Shown one piece after another: positions 3,304-47,054 of a stretch of DNA of 48,871 bases (position 1 is the first letter of the stretch; each line of letters opens with the position of its first letter). Origin of the DNA: Pelomyxa schiedti (Eukaryota > Protista > Evosea); assembly GCA_020536535.1 (NCBI GenBank), contig JAHLWZ010000782.1, positions 1 to 48,871 of the forward strand, in the 5' to 3' direction. Under the pieces are notes generated by a model, which saw nothing but the letters and a program-made list of their open reading frames with translations, was not told the origin of the DNA and did no database searches. The translations under genes were made by a program, and so were the position numbers.

Positions 3304-4067
3304 TCATATTGACGAGAAGTCATTCCTTATCTCCTGGTAGAACTTTCTGTGCTGGTACCACTGAGCCAGCCTGTTTGCGCCATACAATGCAGCAGTCATC
3401 CCGGCGGCCACAATGACCAGCCCAAACACGAGGGCGAATCCCAGGGCAACCCACTCCCACGACGGGATGCCAACCACCGACTCGTCGCTGGGCGACACAA
3501 CCTCTGACTCGCTCTGTGATGTGGGCACGTGTGAGGAGGATGTGGATGCAGAATAGGAATCCGAATCGGAAGCAGCATATTCAGACGTGCTGCTGATACT
3601 GGTGCTGCTGGGGCGTGTGGGTGCAATGGTTGCTGTTGCTGGAATGACATCCACTTGGTTCCCATCAAAATCGACATCAACATCGGCGGTGGCACGGCCA
3701 TTTTGTACTTGGGCGGCAGCTGNNNNNNNNNNNNNNNNNNNNNNNNNNNNNNNNNNNNNNNNNNNNNNNNNNNNNNNNNNNNNNNNNNNNNNNNNNNNNN
3801 NNNNNNNNNNNNNNNNNNNNNNGTGCTGCTGGGGCGTGTGGGTGCAATGGTTGCTGTTGCTGGAATGACATCCACTTGGTTCCCATCAAAATCGACATCA
3901 ACATCGGCGGTGGCACGGCCATTTTGTACTTGGGCGGCAGCTGCTCCACCCCCACCACCACATGCGCTTGACGCCATTATCATCGCAATGCCAACTACAA
4001 CAACATAGGCCACAGGGGTCAGTCGTCCGGTGACCGTGTGATGTGGTTGTTCGTAGAGGGCGGTCAT
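3304..4067 (-). CDS. Intronless orphan type I membrane protein (N-terminal hydrophobic segment, Ser-rich stalk, TM, short tail), about 180 aa after collapsing the gap duplication
   Basis: MTALYEQ...VAYVVVVGIAMIMASSAC, then an S/D-rich region, TM WEWVALGFALVFGLVIVAAGMTAALYGA and tail HRKFYQEIRNDFSSI*. Removing the 221-nt gap plus duplication leaves a 543-nt in-frame ORF. An upstream TTG start at 4106 is possible. Confidence 0.7.
3602..3943. other. Scaffold gap (100 N, 3723-3822) flanked by an exact 121-bp duplication (3602-3722 = 3823-3943)
   Basis: Same artefact pattern as the first gap. Confidence 0.9.
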
Positions 4068-4166
4068 GGCAAGAACAACCAAATCTGGTACCCAGTATAA
4101 TGTCAAGGTCGTTGTCGTTCGTCGTCTACGACGTTCGTTTATAAAAAAAAGGGAAAGAAACTTAGC

Positions 4167-8712: not shown

Positions 8713-9036
8713 TGCTAATTCTAATTAATTCGTAATGCGACTTCCTTATAAGTGACAGGTAGCTCTGGCAGGACCGACGGGTCGGGTTGGACTGCCTGAC
8801 TGGTCGCGGCGGGTACGATGAGCTCCCTTTCTTGATTTGTGTAATTAGTCCCCCGACATGCAACTGCACATTGATTGGAGTCGCCAGCCAAGTTTGCTTC
8901 CTCGCGCAGAAGTGCAACGCCCTGACAGGTGTATGCATTGTGCATTGTTGGGTTCGCACGGATGTGGTTCCTGGATGACTCTACTCTGCACAATCACAAC
9001 AACAAACAAAACGAAAACCAGTCGGCGAAGGGGGGC

Positions 9037-10043
9037 ATGGGTGACATCAACGCGAGGACGAGTGCAGGGGTTTGGCTGCCAGTGAAAGTCACGCCATCAA
9101 CGTCGTCGTGGTCGTGGCGGGTGGTGGGTCCGTTTCAGTTTATCGCGGGGGTGGTGCGGCGCAAGGTAGTGGGCACCAGGCGGACCGTGGTGATGGCAAT
9201 TGTGGGACTCGCGGGGGTGGCTGGGTGCTTGGTGTTAATAAGGGCACTCTTGATATCTTGGAGAAGAAGACGTGATTTGGCCAAGTTCCTGGCAACTGTA
9301 CTTGCTATTAATAACCCATTGATGCTTAGTAAAAATACTAATTGTTCATTGTAATGTTACTGTGTTAAAGTAGTGCTGGTGGTTTTTTTGAAGTCTCAAT
9401 ACTCCGTTTACAGCCACCGGCATCTGGGGCTTCGATTCTGCAGGAACATATGCTCTACCAGCAACTATTATCGAACAGTGGAGTGAAGAAGCGCCTGCTC
9501 CCGGTCTACATTCCATCCCGAACTCCCAAATCACCCACATGGGCCCGCCGCTCCTCCCCGCCCCTAGAACTCAACTCCGACCTTCCCCCGCTCTCCCGCA
9601 CAAAGCTCAAGCTCTCTGACTCACCCAAACTCCCCAGCACCTCCGGTTCCGTTACTCCCAATCGTTCCCACCGGGGCTCCAGGATCTCCTCACGCCGCCA
9701 TCACTCGGCTTCACCACCACACACCGCCGTCGCCTCCGAACCCACAAAGCCATCCCGCCGCGCCAACCACAGCAGCGGCAGCCCCAATCCGCACCGGAAT
9801 TCCTCCACTTCCTCCAAAGAAAAGGCAGATGTATCCAACATAGTTCCCGATTGGGTAGGAACGCTTGTGCAAGAGTCGCAGAAGCCACACCAACCGCTGC
9901 TACACCTCAATGCCAACAAGCGGCAGAGGGCCATGTCCACATCCGAGCCACCCGAAAACTATCCTGACACTACTACTAGTACTGCGAATGACAAGACCAC
10001 ATCACCAACACCCGAATCCTCGCCTCCCACAAGCAACCCTTGA
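9037..10043 (+). CDS. Orphan membrane-anchored S/P-rich protein (paralogue A), exons 9037-9297 and 9414-10043
   Basis: N-terminal TM VVMAIVGLAGVAGCLVLIRALLISW followed by RRRR. A phase-0 GT-AG intron at 9298-9413 joins it to the 9450..10043 ORF. Carries the motif IVPDWVG...QPLLHLN. Confidence 0.65.
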
Positions 10044-10276
10044 CAATCCCATACCCACCCTTTGTTTCCCTCAGTATTGTTTCAAAAATGTGGCTTACCT
10101 CACAACCACCAAACATACTTCCTAGTCCAACCCCCACAATGCACAACTAGTGACCGATGTTTTGTCTAGATTGATGAATCGGATTCACATAAATCAGAAT
10201 TAATTGGTGCCGCAGGGCGCCGAGTGCTCTCGACTACAGTAGGCTACGACCCCAGGGAACCAGATCGACACCAACA

Positions 10277-11799
10277 ATGGTTATGATGCAGCTGTGGCGT
10301 TGGTTGCTGGGGAAGCTCCTACCCGCGGCGAGGCACCTCGCTGGCCCCCCCGCAGCCTCTGCCCCCCACAAACTGCAGCGGGGCGCCAGGGACACGTGGG
10401 AGGGAGGAGGGAGGGGCGGGGGTGGGAGGGCCAGCGGGAGCAAGGGACGGCGGTGGGTGCTGGTGCACGCGGGGGGCGCCGCGGGGGCCTACACGGCTGT
10501 GGTGCTGGCCCTGTGTGTGGTTGGGTGGCGGGGTCTGCGGCTGGCGTGGACAGCGGCGACCTGCGGGTGGGCCGCCGGGGCCGCGTGGATGATGCTGAGT
10601 ACCGGGGGGAGGGACCGCGAGGGCGATAGAGATAGGGGTGCAGGCAGTGTTGGCGGTGGCAGGGCCAGCGGGAAGGGGACGGGGACGGGGAGGGCGCAGC
10701 GGAACGGGAATGGGATGATGTTGAGGGCTGGGGCCGGTGGGTATTGGTGTGACTGGGACGACTACCCCTGCGATGACGTGTATTGCCCCGATATGGCCTG
10801 TCAAACGGTATCGTGCCCCCCAAAAGCCTTTTTTTTTTTTGGCTCTAAATGTACACATTTTCTTAGTGTGGCACTACCAACGAAATCTCTCCGCTGCCAC
10901 AGGAGCAGAGAGTAACAGGGCGAGGGGAAGATAGGCAGGAGCCACACCACACTGACAATCATATGGCTGAACTTGAGACTTTGGTCTCTGCTGATCTCGA
11001 CAAGGAACAAATACCAAGCCTCCCCCAGGCTATCCTGAAAGATGAAAGAACTGTCCCAGCGACCCAACTGCCCGTACCTCCTGCGGCGGAACCAAAACAA
11101 CCGGCCGCGGAAAAGCCAGTACCACCGCCATTGCCAGAACCTGTTAATACTGAGGATATGGCATACGGGGAACCCCTTCCAGAAAATAGCCAGATAAATA
11201 CAGACTCCATTCCCGCATCACCTTCTGTCATGACACCTGCAAATTCAGAGTCACAACCACAAGAAATCGTACAACAAGATCCCGCTGCCATTCCCGAGCA
11301 ATCCATCTCTCTAAATATCTGTGGCTCAACCTCAGCTAGCAACACTAATTCCACCCCAAGTGAAACCCCCACAAATTTGGCAACTGAACCAGCAGATAAT
11401 TATAATTCCTACACAGCAACAAACCTACCAGTCTCTTCCACAATGACTGAAACATCAGCGGACCCCACCGACACAGTTCCAAAGTTATCTGTGGAAATCC
11501 CTATTGTAGATTCTACCCCACTAACACACGATAACAACCTCCAACAACAACAAGTACCACCACTGCCAAAGCCACACAAGAAAGTCTCTGGCCACAAGAA
11601 ATCCCAATCACTCCCCCCAGCCCTAATACCTACATGGGTTGACCTCATGACCACTAACTACAAGAAGAAGCAAACACCACAACCATTATTGCACCTCAAC
11701 AGCCCTAGTCCCTCAACCCCCAGAGGTAGAAACCCCAATTTGTTACTTCGGTCATCCCACAATCCCCCTGCTCACAACCCCAACAATCAGTCTCTTTAG
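10277..11799 (+). CDS. Orphan membrane-anchored P/T/S-rich protein (paralogue B), exons 10277-10807 and 10867-11799
   Basis: GC-rich first exon with hydrophobic segments (YTAVVLALCVVGW, AWTAATCGWAAGAAWMML). A phase-0 59-nt GT-AG intron at 10808-10866 joins it in frame to the 10963..11799 ORF. Carries the motif LIPTWVD...QPLLHLN. Confidence 0.65.
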
Positions 11800-17947: not shown

Positions 17948-20900
17948 ATGGTTCGCATTACACCGGCCGTGGGCGTTGGTTGCACCCCCAACGAGCAGTA
18001 CCACCACCACAACCACCGCGTTGGCCCCACCACCCCCCCCGCCCACGCCACTACTGCTCCCTCGACAACAAACAACCCCCATCCTCCTCCCCTGTTGCAG
18101 CGCCCTACGCCGCCACGCACCGCCGCGGCCGCCACCACCACCACCACTGCCAGCAGCAGCAACCCCCAAGGGGCCGCGCGTGTGCCACAGCCGCCGCATG
18201 GGGCCCCTCCTCCGCTTTCGTCCCTCGCCACACCGTCCGGCGGGGGTGGGGGGGGACCTGGCCCCAAGCCCCCCGGTGCCCGCCCGCAGCCAGCTCCCCC
18301 TGTCTCGCCCCCGCCGGGGACCACAGCGACAGGGGGGGCCAAGGCACCACCACCGGTGGCGTGCCCGTCGTGCCTGACTGCCCTCGTGTTTGGTCGCCAG
18401 ACCACATCCACCTCCGAGTCACAACCACGAGGAACGGGCGGGGGAGGGGGAGGGGCCGAGTGGAGGAGGGCGAGGGTGTCCGATGACAACGTGGTGGCTT
18501 TACAGATGAGGAATGTCACTGGCACTGGGACTGGCACTGGCACTGCGGTCGAGGTGCGGCAGGGGCAAAGTGATGCTGCTGCTGCTGGATACCGTATTGT
18601 TGTTGGCGATGTAGATGATAACATGCCCTGCTGGGTGCTGGCTACTGCCGCTGACCAGAGGGGTACTACGTCGTCGCCTATTCATCGTGATTTCTTTCTT
18701 ACTTGCGTAATAGAAATCGACGATGACTGGCTATTCATTCTGGACCTGCTTGTTACTGTGTTCCCGCAGTGCATGGAATCCCCAGCCTGGTCCGAGACCC
18801 TGCCCAAGGGTACTGGTTTCACCTGGGCCAAGATTCCTTGACTGTTTGTAGGTGGTCTGGAGTTACTGAATAAAAGGAAGTTTCTTGTTCACTATTTGCA
18901 ACGGCGATTGAAGCCTAATTCCCCTCAGCCTCCAAGCACAACTACAAACAGTGTATCAAAACTTCGTTCTCTTCCGACTCCAAATCCAGTTTCCCGTTCA
19001 CTACCAACCTCTGTACCCTCCACACCCTCCCTTCAGCAGCAACCTGCAAGTATTATTCCTCCGCCTCCCTCTGTGTCGGACTGGTATATCCCACCACCAG
19101 TTGCCGAATCTACTGCAACAACAAAGGTAAGGCATCTCACGCTAAGGATGTCAAAAATTTCGCGAGACATGATACCTATTCCAGGGCAATGCTGATCTCT
19201 TTGCCGAAGTTGCGAGATGGGACCTCAAGAAAGAAGGACTGCAACAGGTACCTCGTCAGAGGTTTGACTCAATCTTATTCACCCATAGGCCCTTAGGCCC
19301 ATACAAGATCAGACAATGAAGGCATTGGAACAACTTTACCAAGGTTACCAACAAAAAGTAAGAGCAATCATTGCCACGCAATTTGACCACGTGAGTTAAT
19401 TTAGTCTCTATCCCCTTCTCAGATTTAAATGACAAAAAAAAAAAATATCAGGGAGTTGCAACTCAAGTTCAATCAGATATGAAAAAGGCGGAACAAAAGC
19501 ATTTAGAGGCGCTTAAAGAAATGTGGGAGCACCAAAGCACTTTTTTTTTTCTCATTGCTCTAGTATGTTTGGAAGGAATTCACTGTTGAGCCAATCAATA
19601 GAGGAAGAAAGCAAAAAAAGAAAGGATGCCTATCTGGTATTTTTACTTTTACAAACCGTTACTCAAAATCAGAAAGTTTAGCCAAAAAGTTATTACTGTG
19701 CAGCGACTTGTCAAAGGATGGCTCACAAGAAATAGATACCAAAAACTAAGTACTTCAACCAGTAATAACACTTCATTAACATTCATAAAGAGAAGACGTG
19801 CACAATCAGAACTAGGACAGTACAAGAGCTGCTGGTTACAGAGCGGACCTATGTTGATTCCTTAGCTATCTTAAAGAAAGTGCGTTTTTTTTTTTTTTTT
19901 TAGTAAATGGCTTGCCACTCATCTTTTTTTTTTTGGTGCAGGAGTTCAGCGAACCCCTCAAACTGAATCTCCATACAAGTAAACCATTCATTACAGCAGA
20001 GAATGTAAACGCGTTGTTCTCAAATTTTGAGAAAATACTTGTTATGCACCAAGGTTTTTTTTTCATTTCATAAATACCCCAAAATAAGTCCCTCACAGAG
20101 CTACTTGGTGAATTAACTGCCCGAGTAGCGAAATGGAATGTCTGGAAAACACCTATTAGTGATATATTTAATGACATCATGCCCTATATGAAGTCATACT
20201 CACTCTACATCAACTCATATGACAAAGCTATTGCAACACTAACTGGTCTCACTTCCTCCAATCCAGAATTTGCATCCTGGCTGAATGTATGTTTGACTTT
20301 TCCCGTTTTTGGGATAACCAATAAAGATGGTCCAAGCAAAACCGGAGCTCAAAGGGAAATTGCTCAACTCGTACCTGATATTACCTGGTCTTTTATTCCC
20401 TTTTTTATGCACCTTTTTTCCAACCTATAATCAACAATACAGTTCAAAGGCAAGTCATGACTACCCATACATAATTGGTAACCTGCCACGACAGGATCCC
20501 GCGATACCAGCTACTTCTTCAGGAGATTCTGAAAAATACCCCGACTGATCATTTCGACTATGCACCACTCACCAGCACCCTTACTTCTATAAAGAAAGTA
20601 GCCAGTGAAATAAATGAAGCAAAACGTAGAGCTGAAGCTCAAGAAAAAGTGCTTTTTATCCAGCACGCTTTGGGTAGTCAAGCACCTGTGTGAGAATAAA
20701 TACTCTGACCAAAACCTCACAAGCAAACAGGACTTGTATCAACCACATCGCTATCTCTGCAAAGAAGGGCCGGTTATGCAAGAGAAAACAGATGAATTAG
20801 TGCCAGTTTTCCTCATACTCTTCACGGGTAGTGTGCTCTCAATGTTTTCTATTTGCTAACAGAGAGCAGACAAAATTCTTATCACTCTGAAAAAGAAGCA

Positions 20901-29713: not shown

Positions 29714-30922
29714 CTAATTTCTTGTGAAAGTTGCAAGAGCAGCACCAGAGAGGGCGTCATGAAGCACAAGTGGCACATAGGCTGTGGCGGTGAGTCTCAT
29801 GCTTGCTGTGAGGTCTGAACACAACGATGAAAGAGGTACGCTAGGCACAATTCCACTGTTGAAGGAGACAATTTGCTTGTGCAAACAAGGGCAGTGAAAG
29901 GAATGAAGAGGCTTCCATAGGTCAGACACGTGGTACACGTCGAATGTGTCCTCCGTGATGGTGCAAAGGTGTTCTGTTCCCAGTGTGACGACATTATCAA
30001 CAAACGGCCTTATGAAGCTGTGAACAACTTCCTTGGTATCACTGTTGTAAACCCTAAACGAACTTGGATGTCGATGAATGGTGAACAGTTTTCCAGTGGC
30101 TGCGTTCCACACGGCATCCACTGGGTGGCCTGGAACACCAAACGTCGTGTAGTAAAGAACACTCTCAGCGTCAAATGTCTCCTGCAGTGCAAGATACCAC
30201 ACGCGCCCCTTGTTCCTTCTGTTTGTCAACAACACCAGGGTATCCTCACCACCCTTTTCATCCGCAAACTTGCACCCGCACACCACAGTCTTGGTGTTCG
30301 GCAATTTGATTGCCCGAACGTCATTTTTCTCATCAGTCCTCCACACATACAAGGTGTCATCTTTGCCCATGACAATCCACTTGGAGTTCCACCTCACAAA
30401 TGACAAACTGTACCTGGAAATTCCCGCCACTTCCTTACCCCTGCCTTGCTTGTCGACGATAGATAGTTGCCGCTGCCCAATAAGCTGAGATATGACTGCA
30501 AACTGATCGCCTTGCAGTGCTGTAACTACAAAGCTATTTGACCAGTCGCCAGACCCGGGGCTACAGAACGCAGTGAAGCACCCACTGGCCACAACCCCCA
30601 ATGTCGGTGACAAGTCCATCCACACGTGGTCCTTTGCCGAGTATGACCTTGATGAGCCCAGAGTGACAGCCACCCTCCTCGACACTGACACTACCCACTG
30701 CCTCCCAAACTCGGCCATCAGTGCTGCTATCGACGCCATATTGTGCACTGGCCTCACTTCGTGACCACCATCTTTGTTTGTTTCTGCCCCTCCCTCTTCA
30801 CTCTCACCATTCGAAGCCTGTTTTCCCCTCCAACAACAACACCTGTGTAATGATGCACATGCTATTGCCAGGAATTGATCCCGGGCATCCAACACAACCC
30901 GTATTCTGTCAGTGTTCATCAT
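29714..30922 (-). CDS. Intronless ARDQ-motif orphan family protein (beta-rich C-terminal domain), about 402 aa from ATG 30922
   Basis: Long uninterrupted ORF (the track extends it to a TTG at 31063). MMNTDRIRVVLDARDQFLAIACAS...FGRQWVV...WNSKW...DVYHVSDLWKPL...DALSGAALATF. Motifs are shared with 45888..47054. Confidence 0.8.
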   Translation of the reverse strand: MMNTDRIRVVLDARDQFLAIACASLHRCCCWRGKQASNGESEEGGAETNKDGGHEVRPVHNMASIAALMAEFGRQWVVSVSRRVAVTLGSSRSYSAKDHVWMDLSPTLGVVASGCFTAFCSPGSGDWSNSFVVTALQGDQFAVISQLIGQRQLSIVDKQGRGKEVAGISRYSLSFVRWNSKWIVMGKDDTLYVWRTDEKNDVRAIKLPNTKTVVCGCKFADEKGGEDTLVLLTNRRNKGRVWYLALQETFDAESVLYYTTFGVPGHPVDAVWNAATGKLFTIHRHPSSFRVYNSDTKEVVHSFIRPFVDNVVTLGTEHLCTITEDTFDVYHVSDLWKPLHSFHCPCLHKQIVSFNSGIVPSVPLSSLCSDLTASMRLTATAYVPLVLHDALSGAALATFTRN

Positions 30923-33900
30923 CCTTCGGAAAAAGGAAAATGATGGAATTCTTGGAATGTGATGGGTAGTGGTGCTGTGCCGAACTGGTCGTTCATAGTG
31001 AATTGAGGGTTTTGTGGTCTTGGTGGTGTTGCACGGGTGTGTTCTAGGGCAGAGAGTAGCCAAAGGAACCCATCGATGAGGCCATCACCGGTAGTGGCAC
31101 ACGAGGGCTGGCACAGCCACATTGGGTGTGACATTAGTGCCAGATTATCAAGGTGCAACTGGCGGGACAGCTCATGAGCTCCAACGGCCCCGGGGATGTC
31201 CTGCTTGTTGGCTGATTGTGTGTGTGTGTTAGTTGTGAACTTATGGGTGGTGATTGTTGGGTTGGGCTGGCGATTGATATTTGGTGAGGAAGGTAACTCC
31301 CCGCGGTTCGTTTGAAGGGTTGAGGTACTTGTGGTTATTGTATTGTGGGATTGGCGATTGGGGATGAAACACACACCAAATATTAGAAAGGGGAGACCGC
31401 CGAGTCCCGGCTCGTTGGCTGTCTGATTGGTGTTGGTTACGGTATTATGGGAAAGTGTAGCAGAATACCCGGAATAGTTCGGCTTCTGTCTCTGGGAAAC
31501 GATAGGGGTCATGGCAGTCCACTACCCAAATCACTGCTGATGTTCCGGCATAATCTTGATGTGAATTAGACATACAGTGTTACTGGTGTTTGGGATTTGT
31601 TTGTACAAATTCTCCAGAGGGGGCGAATTTTGTCCGCTGTTCACATGGGTGACAATTTAAAAATGGTAGGAACATCGTAGTATATACCTCCACCAACATC
31701 CTTTACAGCCATGAGGGAAAAAAAAAAAAAGACACAGAGACTTACCCAAACAACGATGTTGATGGCATTCCATTGGATGGTTTCCACATCTGGGATATAT
31801 AAAAGAAATGTGGATAAAAACCAGAAACGTACTGAAACCAGTAGTTGGAATGGTGGTGGAAACAGTTCCAAGCCCAATTTTTTGCATTATACTAGTTTTA
31901 CCTGAAGAATTGAATGCTTCAGTACACAGCTCTGGGAAAAAAAATGAGTGAACCTGCAGCATCCAGACCGTTGACTATGAACCGGGTTTCTGGTGAGGCC
32001 CTTGTTTTGGAAAAAAATGAAAACGACTTGGGCAGAAGAGAGGAAAGAAAGGACTGTGGTGGAAGACTGTTCAAAAGCTCGTTTGTTGCTCTGACACCAA
32101 CATGAGATGCGTGTTAAAGGGTATTTACATACGAAGAACAACAAGCACCGCCAGGAACAGAATAGATTTTATCATGAGAAAGGGCAAAGAGATTCTTATA
32201 ATTCCCGTGGCACCTAAGATAATATAAATAACCTGCTGGGGAAAAAAAATAATAGGAGTGATACTGCGAAATCAAGGGCAAGTTCCCCAGTTTCATATAT
32301 TTTTTTATTGATGTGTCCCAGGGCTTTGTTATGAACAACTCCTTCCACAACTCATTGTTTGAGCACAGGTCATTGAGAGCGTGGCATGTTTGAGACAAGT
32401 GGCACAGAGAGCTCGGACCAAGATACTGTAGAATTTGGCTTCATTTCGAATTTGTGTTAAGTGATTTCTTGGTGTGGAATTTACATACAATAGTGTTTCC
32501 CCAGGCAAGGTACTGAAATCACCTGATAAAAAAAGATGAAGAGTAAGAGACTCAAATTGAAAAAGATGAAAAACCCATCAGACTGCGTGAAGGTGACCTG
32601 GGAGTGACTGCGAGTTGTTGTGGACTTTGAGCGATGCAGGCAGAGTGCAACCATCCGCAGGAAATCTTGATTATCCTTCGGCTTTGCAGGGCTAAAATGA
32701 CAGTTGGGATATTTCGATTCTCAAAGTCACCATGTCCTGTTGAAAGTGGGTCTCAGTTTTAAAACATGGATAAACGAACCAAGTTGACCACATTTGTTGG
32801 ACCCCCAGCTGTATGTGATACCTGTGTCACCTGCAACTGCGATGGTATGCCCTTGACCAAAGGCACCTCCAGCGGCAATTTGATGTACTCTCGGAATTCC
32901 ATTGACAAGGGTGGGGATGTTCCGCTGGGTCAAGTCACCAAGGCCGAGTTGGCCTGTACTGTTGTCTCCAAAGGCAAATAGGTGGCCTGCTTCAGAAACC
33001 GCCATTGTGTGATTATCACCACAGGCAACCATGTGCGCCCTCTCTGGAAGGAGGGAAACCCTTTCGGGGATGTTCGCTGTAGTCTGTGTTAGAGGGGATC
33101 AGAAAATGATAACTGACAGTAGGAAGTTTTCTTGTGGGAAAGAAGCATACGATTTCTCCCAACCCTAACCGTAGAGGAGATGAGAAAGGAGCAGAAAATA
33201 AAGGGAGGAAGAATTAGGAAACAGTTACCAAGTTGTCCAAGATTTCCATTTCCCCATGTGAATAGGTCTCCACTTTTGGATATCGCAGCAGTGTGCTTTC
33301 CTCCGCAGGAAATAAAAGATATTTGTTTGCCTGGGTCAAAGTGACAGAGCGTTAATTTCTCTCTGGAAATGATAAGTGGATTAAGGTTGAAAGAAGCATG
33401 GAGCCAGGAGATTACCGGTCTGTGGTGTCACCAACACCCAGTTGTCCTTTATCATTGCATCCTATTGTATAGGCTTGACCCTGAAATATCACCACAGAGT
33501 GCAGACTCCCGCATGCCAATGAAGTGTACGAGTCATCTGGTTTTTGTGAGTTAAATAGTTAGTATTGTTGCTCTCGTGATTCTTACCCCAGTTCGGTGGA
33601 TCGATATATTTTGGAAAGCAGTAACTTGCCCTCACTGCACCCACTCCCACTGGAGTAACATAATAGGTCTTGGACAGCTGGTCCGGATCCATATCCCAGC
33701 GTAAAAGAGTTGCATTTGAAACAACTGCCCAAGTTGAAAGAGCCCCACAAGCAATCCTATTGAGGCACAGTAGTTGTAGGAGAACACTGAGTTATAAGGG
33801 TATAGTGAGTGGATGTACCATCGTGCCAAACAGAAGTGATCCTGCAGCCACAGTGGTTGGGCACAACAGTGACCTCCACCCCATGACGTTAATTCCCCAT

Positions 33901-34277
33901 TGCACAGTGCTGATGTAACACTGGTTATGTTATGTTACCATTCAATAATTGAAGATTAAAATTATGTGAGTGCAGTATATTTTAAAACTAGTGCCTTTAT
34001 TTTATTTTCTGTTAAATACATTAAAAGGATGATGGGCGGAACCCAACCTTCCACCGCAAGCAACGTCGCTGGGTTCAAACGACGTCAACGCCTCAACTAC
34101 TCTCGGAATCGCTTGCCCTCGCGGTCCATCCTTATGGGTTGGTTGATATCAGCATAATATACACCTGAGGACAAAACGGGAGGGGGTGTTACGCGCACGC
34201 GCACCTACCAAGTTGGTCCGACCAAGCTGCCCGTGGTCGGCACACCCCCACGTCATCACCTCCTTGCGCCCCGTCAT
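30919..34277 (-). CDS. RCC1-repeat / F-box / Arf-family GTPase fusion protein, multi-exon
   Basis: ATG 34277. About 7 RCC1 repeats (VMTWGCADHGQLG, VACGG, ISCGGKHTAAISKSGDLFTWGNGNLGQLG, VACGDNHT..FAFGDNSTGQLG, ISCGWLHS). F-box FSTLPGETLFQILQYLGPSSLCHLSQTC..LCSNNELWKELF at about 32335-32460. Arf motifs GLDAAGKTS, TIPTTGFNVET, WDVGGADKIRPLW, VIWVVD, FANKQD and SCATTGDGL. Every junction I traced from the F-box through the Arf domain is phase-compatible GT-AG. TGA at 30919-30921. Confidence 0.88.
31688..31700 (-). other. 13-nt microexon (GATGTTGGTGGAG) encoding the Arf G3 motif DVGG
   Basis: Flanked by AG (31702-31701) and GT (31687-31686), with 45- and 51-nt introns either side. It is required to restore W-DVGG-x-DKIRPLW. 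Confidence 0.8.
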
Positions 34278-45887: not shown

Positions 45888-47054
45888 ATGCCCCACACTG
45901 GGCTGGGTACCCACCTCACTTTGAGGAAGGGGATCCAGGCACGCGACCAACTGGCGTCGCTTCTTGTGGCGTCGCAGTGTTGTAGGTGCGGGAACAACTC
46001 GGCCGCGGGGGTGTTGGGGCCGGTGCTAGTGCGGCAATTGTGGGACACCTGGGGCATCGGCACCGAGAGGAAAGTGGTCGTTGCGGTTACGGCGACCAAC
46101 GGTGCCCTGTTGCCCATGGCAGTCAGGTTTGGTGTCTCAATCGCGCTTATGGGAATGACAACCGACGTGCACATCGCGTGCATATACGGATACTGGGTGG
46201 ACTACAACCTGAATGTGATGCAAGTTGGTGCCAATGTTCTCCGTCTGAGCGATGCCACGACTGGGGGGAGCAGGGAATTAGTGCCACAGCGGAGGTTTGC
46301 CATGAACCACTTGTGTATGAACGGAAAGTGGTGGCTGCAGATCAAAAGAGAAGGCCACTTGCTGGTAGTGACTAATTTGCAGGGAGATAACACTGGCGAA
46401 CTGGCGTTTGTCCCACTTCCCAAGACTCACAGTATTGTGAAGTCTATGAGCTTTTGCAAATTGTGTTCATCACAGTCACTGATGATTATGAAGAGAGGCC
46501 ATAAATCCTTGCTGTTTGTTGTTGATATTGCCAGAACCTATGCTACTAAGAGTCTGCAGATAGTGAGCTCAACTCAATGCACATGTGGCTATTTTGCAGA
46601 TGACTGCGTGGAACAGATTATTCTTATGAAGAACAAGGCTGAGCAAAATGTGTTCGTTGTTGAGATTACAATCCCGAACCCTCCATATAGTGTGGTGTTT
46701 GCAGTTCAACAGACTGGAGTGATGAGCAAGCTCATGAATCATGCAGAGCCTCCCCCAGGAGGAATTCTGAGTCAATTGAGTAGCTCCCTTTTCTCCCTTT
46801 GCACCCTGAAGAAGCTAGATATCTGGGACTGCAATGACACGGCCTTACCTCTGAGGACACTACAGATTTCAGCTGCATGCGAGGGCCCAGCATTTTCGGG
46901 GATCCTTTCAGGAAATGGGTTGATTTGCCTCAGAGGAGACAACAACCAACTGCTTGTGACTGAAGCAACATCAGGTGTTGTTGTTGCTTCCATTGACTTT
47001 CTGCAACCTGGATGGGACCTGGGCATCAGAGTACATCCATCCTTCCTTTGGTGA
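45888..47054 (+). CDS. Intronless ARDQ-motif orphan family protein, 388 aa
   Basis: Uninterrupted ORF. ARDQLASLLVASQCCRCGNNSAAGVL..LWDTWGI..MNGKW..DIWDCNDTALPL..EATSGVVVASIDF. Motifs are shared with 29714..30922. Confidence 0.82.
   Translation: MPHTGLGTHLTLRKGIQARDQLASLLVASQCCRCGNNSAAGVLGPVLVRQLWDTWGIGTERKVVVAVTATNGALLPMAVRFGVSIALMGMTTDVHIACIYGYWVDYNLNVMQVGANVLRLSDATTGGSRELVPQRRFAMNHLCMNGKWWLQIKREGHLLVVTNLQGDNTGELAFVPLPKTHSIVKSMSFCKLCSSQSLMIMKRGHKSLLFVVDIARTYATKSLQIVSSTQCTCGYFADDCVEQIILMKNKAEQNVFVVEITIPNPPYSVVFAVQQTGVMSKLMNHAEPPPGGILSQLSSSLFSLCTLKKLDIWDCNDTALPLRTLQISAACEGPAFSGILSGNGLICLRGDNNQLLVTEATSGVVVASIDFLQPGWDLGIRVHPSFLW

What the first reader, a model, noticed from the sequence alone, without database searches (positions are those of the whole stretch)
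30919..34277. RCC1 propeller + F-box + Arf GTPase fused in one gene: candidate self-contained GTPase-gated ubiquitin-ligase adaptor
Seen: the spliced model gives about 7 RCC1 repeats, then a textbook F-box, then a linker ending in an Arf-like amphipathic segment (SFSFFSK) and a full Arf G1-G5 domain, all in frame. Known: F-boxes recruit substrates to SKP1-CUL1. RCC1-like propellers act as GEFs or substrate-binding platforms (RCC1 for Ran, HERC RLDs). TRIM23/ARD1 is a precedent for an E3-Arf fusion. The F-box in the middle, with a binding domain on each side, is an atypical layout. Inference: the protein could target SCF to membranes in a nucleotide-dependent way, or the RCC1 domain could act on its own Arf domain. 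I do not know this three-domain architecture, but I cannot exclude that it has been described.
Basis: partly seen in the sequence, partly recalled or inferred. Interest (0 to 1): 0.88.

Follow-up and report, generated by a model that had tools for sequence, protein, structure and literature searches.

The report
Amoeba RCC1–F-box–Arf fusion gene
This is a real single gene of the anaerobic amoeba Pelomyxa schiedti that joins an RCC1-like propeller, an F-box and an Arf GTPase domain, but it is already annotated, and a 2021 survey of Arf proteins already lists the same domain combination in related amoebae.

Summary
On the minus strand, 34277/34256..30919, twenty GT-AG exons encode one 714-aa protein. 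It has a 7-bladed RCC1-like propeller (residues 1-362), an F-box (382-427), a helical linker ending in an amphipathic segment, and a complete Arf domain (504-671).

The window is a Pelomyxa schiedti scaffold (JAHLWZ010000782.1). My independent splice model reproduces the deposited protein (P0012) except for the start codon and one 14-nt micro-exon.

The fusion is not an artefact:
- At least 10 P. schiedti paralogs share the layout and the intron positions.
- The linker introns of two paralogs are 44 and 50 nt, so they cannot be read through.
- An intron-less 994-aa ORF from another organism (P0205) carries Kelch+RCC1+F-box+Arf.

The architecture is not new. Vargová et al. 2021 list 'RCC, F-box-like' Arf1-group proteins in Mastigamoeba, and Kelch+RCC+F-box forms in Acanthamoeba and Thecamonas.

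One detail I did not find mentioned in that paper's main text: every fused member examined lacks the catalytic Gln of Arf (A here; E, G, P or S elsewhere), while the nucleotide-binding and switch motifs are conserved.

Most likely function (inferred): an SCF substrate receptor tethered or gated by a GAP-insensitive Arf module. Novelty is low and function is untested.

The parts
30919..34277 (-). Whole coding region of the RLD-F-box-Arf gene. The deposited CDS starts at 34256; an alternative in-frame ATG lies at 34277; the stop TGA is at 30921-30919.
   Evidence: Exons (high to low): 34256(34277)-34209, 34130-34048, 33920-33819, 33756-33587, 33536-33416, 33362-33229, 33164-33151, 33083-32780, 32736-32575, 32522-32489, 32438-32265, 32213-32133, 32090-31954, 31901-31833, 31789-31746, 31700-31688, 31636-31607, 31554-31469, 31422-31377, 31211-30919. 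These translate exactly to P0012, and all introns are GT..AG, 42-165 nt. The deposited gene call gives one 714-aa product.
32627..34256 (-). RCC1-like domain (RLD), a 7-bladed beta-propeller, residues 1-362 (exons 1-9).
   Evidence: Pfam RCC1 3.2e-63 and WD40_RLD 7.8e-62. In the AF2 model, blades 4-7 have pLDDT >90. Foldseek TM(target) is 0.75-0.83 to UVR8, HERC1/HERC2 RLDs and RCC1 over 350-400 columns. Best PDB sequence matches are UVR8 9e-71, HERC1 RLD 2e-52 and RCC1 2e-34.
32330..32517 (-). F-box, residues 382-427 (FSTLPGETLFQIL...NNELWKELFI), split by the 50-nt intron 32488-32439.
   Evidence: Pfam F-box-like 50.5 bits (cut-off 24.3) and F-box 33.3 bits (cut-off 20.5). The nearest PDB sequences are the F-boxes of Legionella AnkB, FBXW7 and FBXL5. 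The segment is helical in the model.
32009..32329 (-). Helical linker, residues 428-503. It includes the conserved 'GN-WK-LF' motif and the amphipathic segment just before the G domain (FLSSLLPKSFSFFSK, about 32053-32009).
   Evidence: Family alignment. Hydrophobic moment 0.49, above the 95th percentile of shuffles, 0.46. Helices 433-484 appear in the model, but pLDDT is low at 486-509.
32091..32132 (-). The 42-nt intron (GTATGT..CAG) in the linker between the F-box part and the Arf part. It contains the only in-frame stop (TAA 32116-32114) between the two.
   Evidence: An intron at the same protein position in paralog P0004 is 44 nt, and a nearby one in P0188 is 50 nt. Neither is a multiple of 3, so read-through is impossible there. 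Exon 13 has no ATG that could start a separate Arf protein.
31051..32008 (-). Arf GTPase domain, residues 504-671 (exons 13-20): G1 GLDAAGKT, switch I IPTTGFN, G3 WDVGG, G4 NKQD, G5 CAT.
   Evidence: Pfam Arf 167.6 bits (cut-off 22.3). phmmer against PDB ARF1/ARF6 gives E about 2e-50. Foldseek TM(target) is 0.87-0.93, rmsd 1.6-2.9 A, to Arf structures.
31635..31688 (-). Split codon for Ala564 (G at 31688 plus CG at 31636-31635), at the position of the catalytic Gln (Arf1 Q71) in WDVGG-Q.
   Evidence: The alignment to solved ARF1/ARF6 shows 'wdvggA' against 'wdvggQ'. The same position is E, G, P or S, or degenerate, in all family members.
31688..31700 (-). 13-nt micro-exon encoding DVGG.
   Evidence: A micro-exon encoding DVGG lies at the same position in paralog P0004.
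33151..33164 (-). 14-nt micro-exon encoding (G)LGEI, which completes the GQLGLG motif of blade 5.
   Evidence: It is present in the deposited protein and absent from my first model. Coordinates were verified.
30922..31050 (-). C-terminal tail, residues 672-714, Pro/Gln/Phe-rich and predicted disordered. None of the aligned paralogs has a comparable extension.
   Evidence: Alignment; pLDDT about 30.

Best explanation
The locus is one protein-coding gene of Pelomyxa schiedti. It belongs to a family, expanded to at least 10 paralogs in this species, of Arf1-derived GTPases fused behind an RCC1-like propeller and an F-box.

Most likely mechanism (inferred, not shown):
1. The F-box docks the protein onto SKP1-CUL1, making it an SCF substrate receptor.
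2. The RCC1-like propeller is the diversifying substrate-binding platform, as in the F-box+RCC1 proteins yeast Saf1 and mammalian FBXO24.
3. The C-terminal Arf module binds GTP. Through its conserved switch regions and the amphipathic segment in front of it, it places or activates the ligase on a membrane or on an Arf-effector complex.
4. The catalytic Gln is replaced throughout the family, so the module is probably insensitive to canonical ArfGAP-stimulated hydrolysis. It would then act as a long-lived 'on' tether, or be reset by some other means such as turnover or ubiquitination.

Shown: the gene structure, the three domains, the family and the motif pattern. Inferred: SKP1 binding, GTP binding, membrane association and the role of the propeller.
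For: One gene:
- The splice model equals the deposited protein.
- The deposited genome predictions were refined with transcript data by PASA/EVM (PMC8887013).
- There are 10 paralogs with the same Pfam order.
- Intron positions are shared with the 44%-identical paralog P0004, including the linker intron and the DVGG micro-exon.
- P0205 is an uninterrupted ORF carrying Kelch+RLD+F-box+Arf.

Domains.

Constraint on the Arf module:
- It is the most conserved part, with mean pairwise identity 0.54 against 0.40 for the RLD, 0.39 for the F-box and 0.24 for the linker.
- 33% of its positions are at least 90% conserved. These include G1, switch I, DxxG, DKIRPLW, NKQD and CAT, while the Q71 position is never Gln.

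RLD as binding platform: the positions conserved among paralogs are almost all structural motif residues (G, H, P, C, W, GQLG). F-box+RCC1 receptors are known (Saf1, 10.1101/636902; FBXO24, PMC10932545).

E3-Arf links are recurrent: Vargová et al. say so explicitly, and TRIM23 auto-ubiquitination controls its Arf GTPase (PMC12075517).
Against: - Nothing was tested biochemically.
- F-box pLDDT is only 53-68, and the amphipathic segment has pLDDT below 50 and contains a Pro.
- The hydrophobic moments of several paralogs are only near the 95th percentile of shuffles.
- N-terminal myristoylation, which normal Arfs need for membrane binding, is impossible for an internal domain.
- I could not check that P. 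schiedti encodes SKP1 and CUL1; their presence is assumed from their near-universal distribution in eukaryotes.
- The effect of Ala or Glu at the Q71 position is extrapolated from the classical Arf1 Q71L mutant (textbook knowledge).
- Transcript support for this particular gene was not seen directly.
Confidence: 0.55

Rival explanations
1. Self-contained GEF-GTPase pair. The RCC1-like propeller acts as an intramolecular nucleotide-release or exchange factor for the fused Arf domain, and the F-box couples the loaded state to SCF.
For: [quoted passage not shown] 1996 and Garcia-Gonzalo et al. 2005, as summarised in PMC6692442). The RLD and Arf domains are always co-inherited in the family.
Against: All established Arf GEFs use Sec7 domains (PMC4644846). 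Positions conserved among the paralog RLDs are structural repeat residues rather than an obvious shared catalytic surface. P0009 and the L001 upstream gene keep F-box+Arf without any RLD. The model's pTM of 0.54 gives no support for a fixed RLD-Arf interface, though the tool reports no PAE.
Confidence: 0.12
2. TRIM23-like circuit. The Arf domain is itself the regulated target: SCF-dependent auto-ubiquitination of the Arf module controls its nucleotide cycle or lifetime, and the Arf module recruits the real downstream partner.
For: [quoted passage not shown] Loss of the catalytic Gln calls for another way to switch off.
Against: There is no RING or B-box here. The analogy rests on architecture only and nothing was tested. 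An F-box protein that needs SKP1-CUL1-RBX1 has a different geometry from a RING in cis.
Confidence: 0.15
3. Non-SCF SKP1 complex. The F-box only recruits SKP1, without a cullin, and the protein works in membrane traffic rather than as a ubiquitin ligase.
For: From general knowledge, not tested here: yeast Rcy1 is an F-box protein that acts with Skp1 in endosome-Golgi recycling independently of Cul1. An Arf domain points to membrane traffic.
Against: There is no evidence either way in the sequence. Expansion to 10 or more paralogs with divergent propellers looks more like a substrate-receptor family.
Confidence: 0.13
4. Annotation artefact or decaying paralog. Two neighbouring genes (RLD-F-box and Arf) are wrongly merged, or this copy is a pseudogene.
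For: The F-box/Arf junction depends on a 42-nt intron that is a multiple of 3 and contains the only stop. The gene needs 13- and 14-nt micro-exons. This copy has Ala at Q71 and a disordered tail of its own.
Against: The Arf N-terminal exon has no ATG. The same junction is spliced through 44- and 50-nt introns in paralogs. Ten paralogs and an intron-less homolog share the layout. All 19 introns keep the frame, and all G motifs are intact.
Confidence: 0.03

Closest known systems
'RCC, F-box-like' Arf1-group proteins of Amoebozoa and Apusomonadida catalogued by Vargová et al. 2021 (MbaArf1e/f of Mastigamoeba balamuthi; AcaArf1g of Acanthamoeba and TtrArlX1 of Thecamonas with extra Kelch repeats)
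   Same: The same three domains are present. In the Mastigamoeba entries the N-terminal RCC1 repeats run to an '...ACGWLSTACVVE' end of the propeller, like 'SCGWLHSACIAQ' here. The Arf domain is classed with Arf1. Mastigamoeba belongs to the same group, Archamoebae, as Pelomyxa.
   Different: Those entries appear only in a supplementary table, and no function is known. The Pelomyxa genome appeared later (2022). I did not find the expansion to 10 or more paralogs, or the family-wide loss of the catalytic Gln, described in that paper's main text. Orthology could not be tested by tree, because the stored supplement truncates the sequences.
TRIM23 / ARD1 (RING-B-box-coiled-coil E3 with a C-terminal Arf domain)
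   Same: An E3-ligase module is fused in front of a C-terminal Arf domain. The Arf domain serves as regulatory and partner-binding module (PMC12075517). From memory only: TRIM23 also lacks Gln at the Q71 position (Lys458).
   Different: A different E3 class, with a RING in cis rather than an F-box adaptor for SCF. It has no propeller, is restricted to animals, and arose independently.
F-box + RCC1-repeat SCF receptors: S. cerevisiae Saf1 and mammalian FBXO24
   Same: An F-box is combined with an RCC1-like propeller that serves as the substrate-binding domain (10.1101/636902; PMC10932545).
   Different: There the F-box is N-terminal to the propeller and there is no GTPase domain. Here the order is propeller, then F-box, then Arf.
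HERC1 (HECT E3 with RCC1-like domains that bind and act on ARF1)
   Same: It links an RCC1-like propeller, ubiquitin ligation and an Arf GTPase. Its RLD is the second-best solved relative of this propeller (E 2e-52; PMC6692442).
   Different: It has a HECT catalytic domain rather than an F-box. ARF1 is a separate protein, and HERC1 is a giant multi-domain protein.
FBXO8 (F-box + Sec7 domain)
   Same: An F-box protein tied to the Arf system. It is thought to control ARF6 through ubiquitination (PMC4644846).
   Different: It carries an Arf-GEF-type domain, not an Arf domain, and has no propeller.

Membership tests
F-box proteins (SKP1-binding adaptors) | Sequence matches the F-box profile above the curated threshold | tested here: met
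   PF12937 F-box-like 50.5 bits (cut-off 24.3) and PF00646 33.3 bits (cut-off 20.5), residues 382-427. The LP..E, I/L core and LW motifs are conserved in the family.
F-box proteins (SKP1-binding adaptors) | Binds SKP1 and assembles with CUL1/RBX1 | not testable with these tools
   Needs pull-down or co-expression. The presence of SKP1/CUL1 genes in P. schiedti was not checked.
ARF family GTPases | Arf profile match and Arf fold | tested here: met
   PF00025 167.6 bits (cut-off 22.3). E about 2e-50 to solved ARF1/ARF6. Foldseek TM(target) 0.87-0.93.
ARF family GTPases | Nucleotide-binding motifs G1 (GxxxxGKT), G2 Thr, G3 (DxxG), G4 (NKxD), G5 (CAT/SA) | tested here: met
   GLDAAGKT, IPTTGF, WDVGG, NKQD and CAT are all present and at least 90% conserved among paralogs.
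ARF family GTPases | Catalytic Gln following DVGG (Arf1 Q71), needed for GAP-stimulated hydrolysis | tested here: not met
   Ala564 here. The position is E in 6 paralogs, G in P0014/P0015, P in P0205, S in P0009, and the motif is degenerate in P0180 and the L001 upstream gene.
ARF family GTPases | N-terminal myristoylated Gly2 plus amphipathic helix | tested here: inconclusive
   Myristoylation is impossible because the domain is internal. A moderately amphipathic segment precedes the G domain in all members (moment 0.43-0.57; shuffle 95th percentile 0.46), but it is modelled with low confidence.
RCC1-like domain (RLD) propellers | Seven RCC1 repeats forming a closed 7-bladed propeller | tested here: met
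   Seven WG/GQLG-type repeats. PF25390 covers profile positions 54-360 of 363. The whole-domain Foldseek alignment spans 350-400 columns with TM(target) 0.75-0.83.
RCC1 proper (Ran GEF orthologue) | Closest relatives are RCC1/Prp20, and it has GEF activity on Ran | tested here: not met
   Best solved relatives are UVR8 (9e-71), HERC1 RLD (2e-52) and RPGR (2e-50). RCC1 itself scores only 2e-34. Activity was not tested.
RCC + F-box-like + Arf1 fusion family (Vargová et al. 2021, Suppl. Table 1) | RCC1-like domain, F-box(-like) and Arf domain in a single polypeptide | tested here: met
   for this gene. for the published entries from Mastigamoeba, Acanthamoeba and Thecamonas.
RCC + F-box-like + Arf1 fusion family (Vargová et al. 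2021, Suppl. Table 1) | Common descent with the published members (one clade) | tested here: inconclusive
   In the Arf-domain tree, 8 Pelomyxa paralogs form one group (SH-aLRT 94), but P0188 and P0205+L001up fall among canonical Arf1-like sequences with weak support. Full sequences of the published members were not available.
TRIM23/ARD1 | RING, B-box and coiled-coil N-terminal to the Arf domain | tested here: not met
   No RING, B-box or TRIM families appear among the Pfam hits of P0012. The resemblance is analogy only.

The most novel reading that the evidence does not exclude
The fused Arf modules form a naturally GAP-resistant class of Arf switch. The catalytic Gln is lost in every member examined, while the switch regions stay under strong constraint. 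This class would have been recruited, in Archamoebae and at least one other, unidentified organism, to hold a diversifying set of SCF substrate receptors on membranes, with switch-off by degradation rather than by GTP hydrolysis. A bolder variant: the propeller is an intramolecular, HERC1-like nucleotide-release factor, which would make the protein a self-loading GTPase-E3 adaptor.
Probability: 0.2. Interest if true: 0.6.

Novelty: new member of a known kind. Interest (0 to 1): 0.3.

Why it matters
It adds little as a discovery. The gene is in GenBank, and the domain combination was catalogued in 2021.

Its remaining value is as a lead. Free-living Archamoebae carry an expanded, uncharacterised family that links the Arf membrane-traffic switch physically to SCF ubiquitin ligation. 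The Arf module is conserved in everything except the catalytic glutamine. If studied, the family could show:
- how an Arf switch works without GAP-driven hydrolysis;
- how ubiquitin ligases are targeted to membranes in a lineage that includes the Entamoeba parasites;
- whether E3-Arf fusions (TRIM23 in animals, F-box/BTB-Arf in protists) converged on one logic.

Tried and rejected
- Exact look-up of the downstream 402-aa ORF, to reach the contig annotation: not on record.
- Word-index homology search with that ORF, to identify the organism: no hits.
- tRNA scan of the window: none found.
- My first splice model missed the 14-nt micro-exon and the 51-nt intron 32264-32214. Both were corrected with paralog P0001 and the deposited protein.
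- tblastn mapping of paralog exons failed on the short exons. I replaced it with an exact-match exon mapper.
- Giant-virus origin of the intron-less Kelch-RLD-F-box-Arf locus L001: no relative in IMG/VR, so the idea is unsupported and the source organism remains unknown.
- Paralogy of the two unannotated ORFs (29717-30922 and 45888-47054): BLASTP E 0.05, not demonstrable.
- Single origin of all fused Arf domains: not resolved by the quick tree.
- Reading the Arf parts of the published Mastigamoeba, Acanthamoeba and Thecamonas proteins: the stored supplement truncates the sequences.
- The spliced protein could not be handed to the search tools as typed text. I searched with exon references until the deposited protein id became available.

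Full report
**Observation.** The region is eukaryotic and intron-rich. Three-frame translation of the minus strand and the DNA itself show, in collinear order:
- RCC1-type repeats (WG...GQLG);
- an F-box (LPGETL|FQILQYL...ELWKELF);
- a Ser/Phe-rich segment (SLLPKSFSFFSK);
- all Arf motifs.

I built a GT..AG splice model by hand. Pfam on stop-free pieces given by reference already confirmed the three families: RCC1 best piece 1.8e-22, F-box-like 5e-11, and Arf profile segments 24-50, 79-107 and 122-172 in successive exons.

**Identity of the locus.** An exhaustive HMMER search with the F-box exon (32135-32437) found nine proteins. Two of them (P0001, 688 aa; P0004, 678 aa) have the F-box near residue 400 and carry RCC1 + F-box + Arf by Pfam. 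A third (P0009) has F-box + Arf only. All three are Pelomyxa schiedti proteins.

A follow-up search with P0001 returned P0012, a 714-aa 'ADP-ribosylation factor subfamily protein' of P. schiedti. It lies on a contig of exactly 48,871 bp, the length of this window. The contig look-up confirms record JAHLWZ010000782.1 (GCA_020536535.1) and one gene call at window 34256..30919 with RCC1, F-box and Arf hits.

My model equals P0012 except in two places. The corrected 20-exon model translates exactly to P0012, and all 19 introns are GT..AG, 42-165 nt. The genome paper states that Augustus predictions were refined with PASA/EVM using single-cell transcriptomes (PMC8887013). That would explain how 13- and 14-nt exons came to be called, but I did not see the transcript evidence for this gene.

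**Is the fusion real?** The critical junction is a 42-nt intron (32132-32091) in the linker. It removes the only in-frame stop between the F-box part and the Arf part. Five observations argue against a merged-gene artefact:
1. The exon that follows has no ATG.
2. Paralog P0004 (44% identical over the F-box-Arf part) has an intron at the same linker position and the same DVGG micro-exon. Its linker intron is 44 nt and that of P0188 is 50 nt, so read-through would shift the frame there.
3. Ten P. schiedti proteins (P0001, P0004, P0010-P0015, P0180, P0188) show the same Pfam order.
4. P0205 is an uninterrupted 2,985-nt ORF with Kelch + RLD + F-box + Arf. It comes from an unidentified organism in a Logan assembly and sits next to a 271-aa F-box + Arf gene.
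5. The same combination is published for other amoebae (see 'What is known' below).

**Anatomy.**
- *Whole protein:* Pfam on P0012 gives RCC1 3.2e-63, WD40_RLD 7.8e-62, F-box-like 1.7e-13 (382-427) and Arf 2.4e-49 (504-671).
- *Model:* an AlphaFold2 model built on the family alignment has mean pLDDT 74 and pTM 0.54. It shows a seven-bladed propeller (blades 4-7 with pLDDT >90), a helical F-box/linker module (pLDDT about 45-70), a poorly defined segment at 486-509, and an Arf alpha/beta fold.
- *Fold comparison:* Foldseek aligns the whole propeller to UVR8, HERC1/HERC2 RLDs, RPGR and RCC1 (TM 0.75-0.83), and the C-terminal domain to Arf structures (TM 0.87-0.93). No solved entry covers more than one of the domains.
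- *Propeller by sequence:* it is a generic RLD (UVR8 9e-71, HERC1 2e-52), not an RCC1 orthologue (2e-34).
- *F-box by sequence:* its nearest solved relatives are the F-boxes of Legionella AnkB, FBXW7 and FBXL5.
- *Arf domain by sequence:* it matches ARF1/ARF6 at about 2e-50.

The residue after DVGG, the catalytic Gln71 of Arf1, is Ala564. In the family it is never Gln:
- E in six paralogs;
- G in P0014 and P0015;
- P in P0205;
- S in P0009;
- degenerate motif in P0180 and in the L001 upstream gene.

Yet the Arf module is the most conserved part of the protein. Its mean pairwise identity is 0.54, against 0.40 for the RLD, 0.39 for the F-box and 0.24 for the linker. G1, switch I, DxxG, DKIRPLW, NKQD and CAT are at least 90% conserved. 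In the RLD, the conserved positions are almost all structural repeat residues. The segment in front of the G domain is moderately amphipathic in all members (moment 0.43-0.57; shuffle mean 0.34, 95th percentile 0.46).

**Mechanism (inferred).** The best-supported reading is an SCF substrate receptor:
- the F-box binds SKP1;
- the propeller is the variable substrate-binding platform, as in the F-box+RCC1 proteins Saf1 and FBXO24;
- the Arf module binds GTP and uses its switch regions and the preceding amphipathic segment to place or gate the ligase on membranes or Arf-effector complexes.

Without the catalytic Gln, the module is probably resistant to ArfGAPs. By analogy with the textbook Q71L mutant, it would then be a long-lived 'on' tether, or be reset by other means.

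The rivals are:
- an intramolecular, HERC1-like nucleotide-release role for the RLD (PMC6692442);
- a TRIM23-like circuit in which ubiquitination of the Arf domain controls its cycle (PMC12075517);
- a cullin-independent SKP1 complex in membrane traffic;
- an annotation artefact or pseudogene, which is unlikely.

**What is known.** Vargová et al. [quoted passage not shown] Their Supplementary Table 1 lists:
- MbaArf1e and MbaArf1f of Mastigamoeba balamuthi (Archamoebae, like Pelomyxa) with 'RCC, F-box-like';
- TtrArlX1 of Thecamonas with 'Kelch repeats, RCC, F-box';
- F-box-only forms in Physarum and Acanthamoeba;
- a Euglena entry with 'RCC1'.

The main text of that paper mentions neither Mastigamoeba nor Q71/glutamine. 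I found no paper describing the Pelomyxa family.

**Phylogeny.** A quick maximum-likelihood tree of Arf domains groups 8 Pelomyxa fused domains (SH-aLRT 94). P0188 and the pair P0205 + L001up fall among canonical Arf1-like sequences with weak support. A single origin of all fusions is therefore neither shown nor excluded.

**Verdict.** The architecture is interesting but already annotated and catalogued, so this is a new member of a known, functionally uncharacterised kind. The modest additions here are the size of the Pelomyxa expansion, the conserved exon structure, and the family-wide loss of the catalytic glutamine in an otherwise strongly constrained Arf module.

Noticed in passing
window 29717-30922 (-): An intron-less 402-aa ORF whose ATG overlaps the stop codon of the RLD-F-box-Arf gene (GGATGATGA). 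The open frame runs 449 codons, far too long to arise by chance. It has no Pfam hit and no homologs, and it is not among the deposited gene calls; the next called gene is a SNARE about 100 nt further on. The in-frame codon score is only slightly better than in the other two frames.
   Followed up: partly
window 45888-47054 (+): A second long intron-less ORF (388 aa) of similar character. Its similarity to the ORF at 29717-30922 is marginal (BLASTP E 0.05, 18% identity). I did not check whether it is annotated.
   Followed up: partly
window about 370-1092 and 3396-4106: Runs of N (X in translation) flanked by duplicated sequence: the TM9SF-like N-terminus 'TQGYYLPGVAPVDYSPGES...' appears on both sides of the gap. 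These look like scaffolding joins rather than biology.
   Followed up: no
window 9000-11000 and 18000-19000: GC-rich islands (0.55-0.62 against about 0.45 elsewhere) with long overlapping ORFs on both strands, rich in Pro/Gly/Ala/Arg.
   Followed up: no
L001:141-4030 (Logan DRR438522): An unknown organism (contig GC 0.45) carries an intron-less tandem: a 271-aa F-box+Arf gene, then a 994-aa Kelch+RLD+F-box+Arf gene (P0205), then a GT10 glycosyltransferase (Pfam Glyco_transf_10) on the other strand. Intergenic spacers are 89 and 21 nt. No relative was found in IMG/VR.
   Followed up: partly
window 34256-34277 (-): The deposited CDS starts at the second in-frame ATG (MTWG...). The upstream ATG (MTGRKEVMTWG...) restores residues before 'TWG' that paralogs P0001 and P0004 have, so the deposited start may be 7 codons short.
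   Followed up: partly
P0010, P0015, P0180, P0179 (P. schiedti proteins): P0010 has a roughly 395-aa N-terminal extension. P0015 ends before G4/G5, so the model is probably truncated. P0180 has a degenerate G3 (DVCRA). P0179, named 'ADP-ribosylation factor 1', is 798 aa with two Arf domains and is probably two tandem genes merged.
   Followed up: no
window 31688-31700 and 33151-33164 (-): Micro-exons of 13 and 14 nt lie inside a gene whose introns are mostly 42-67 nt. The DVGG micro-exon is conserved in a 44%-identical paralog.
   Followed up: yes
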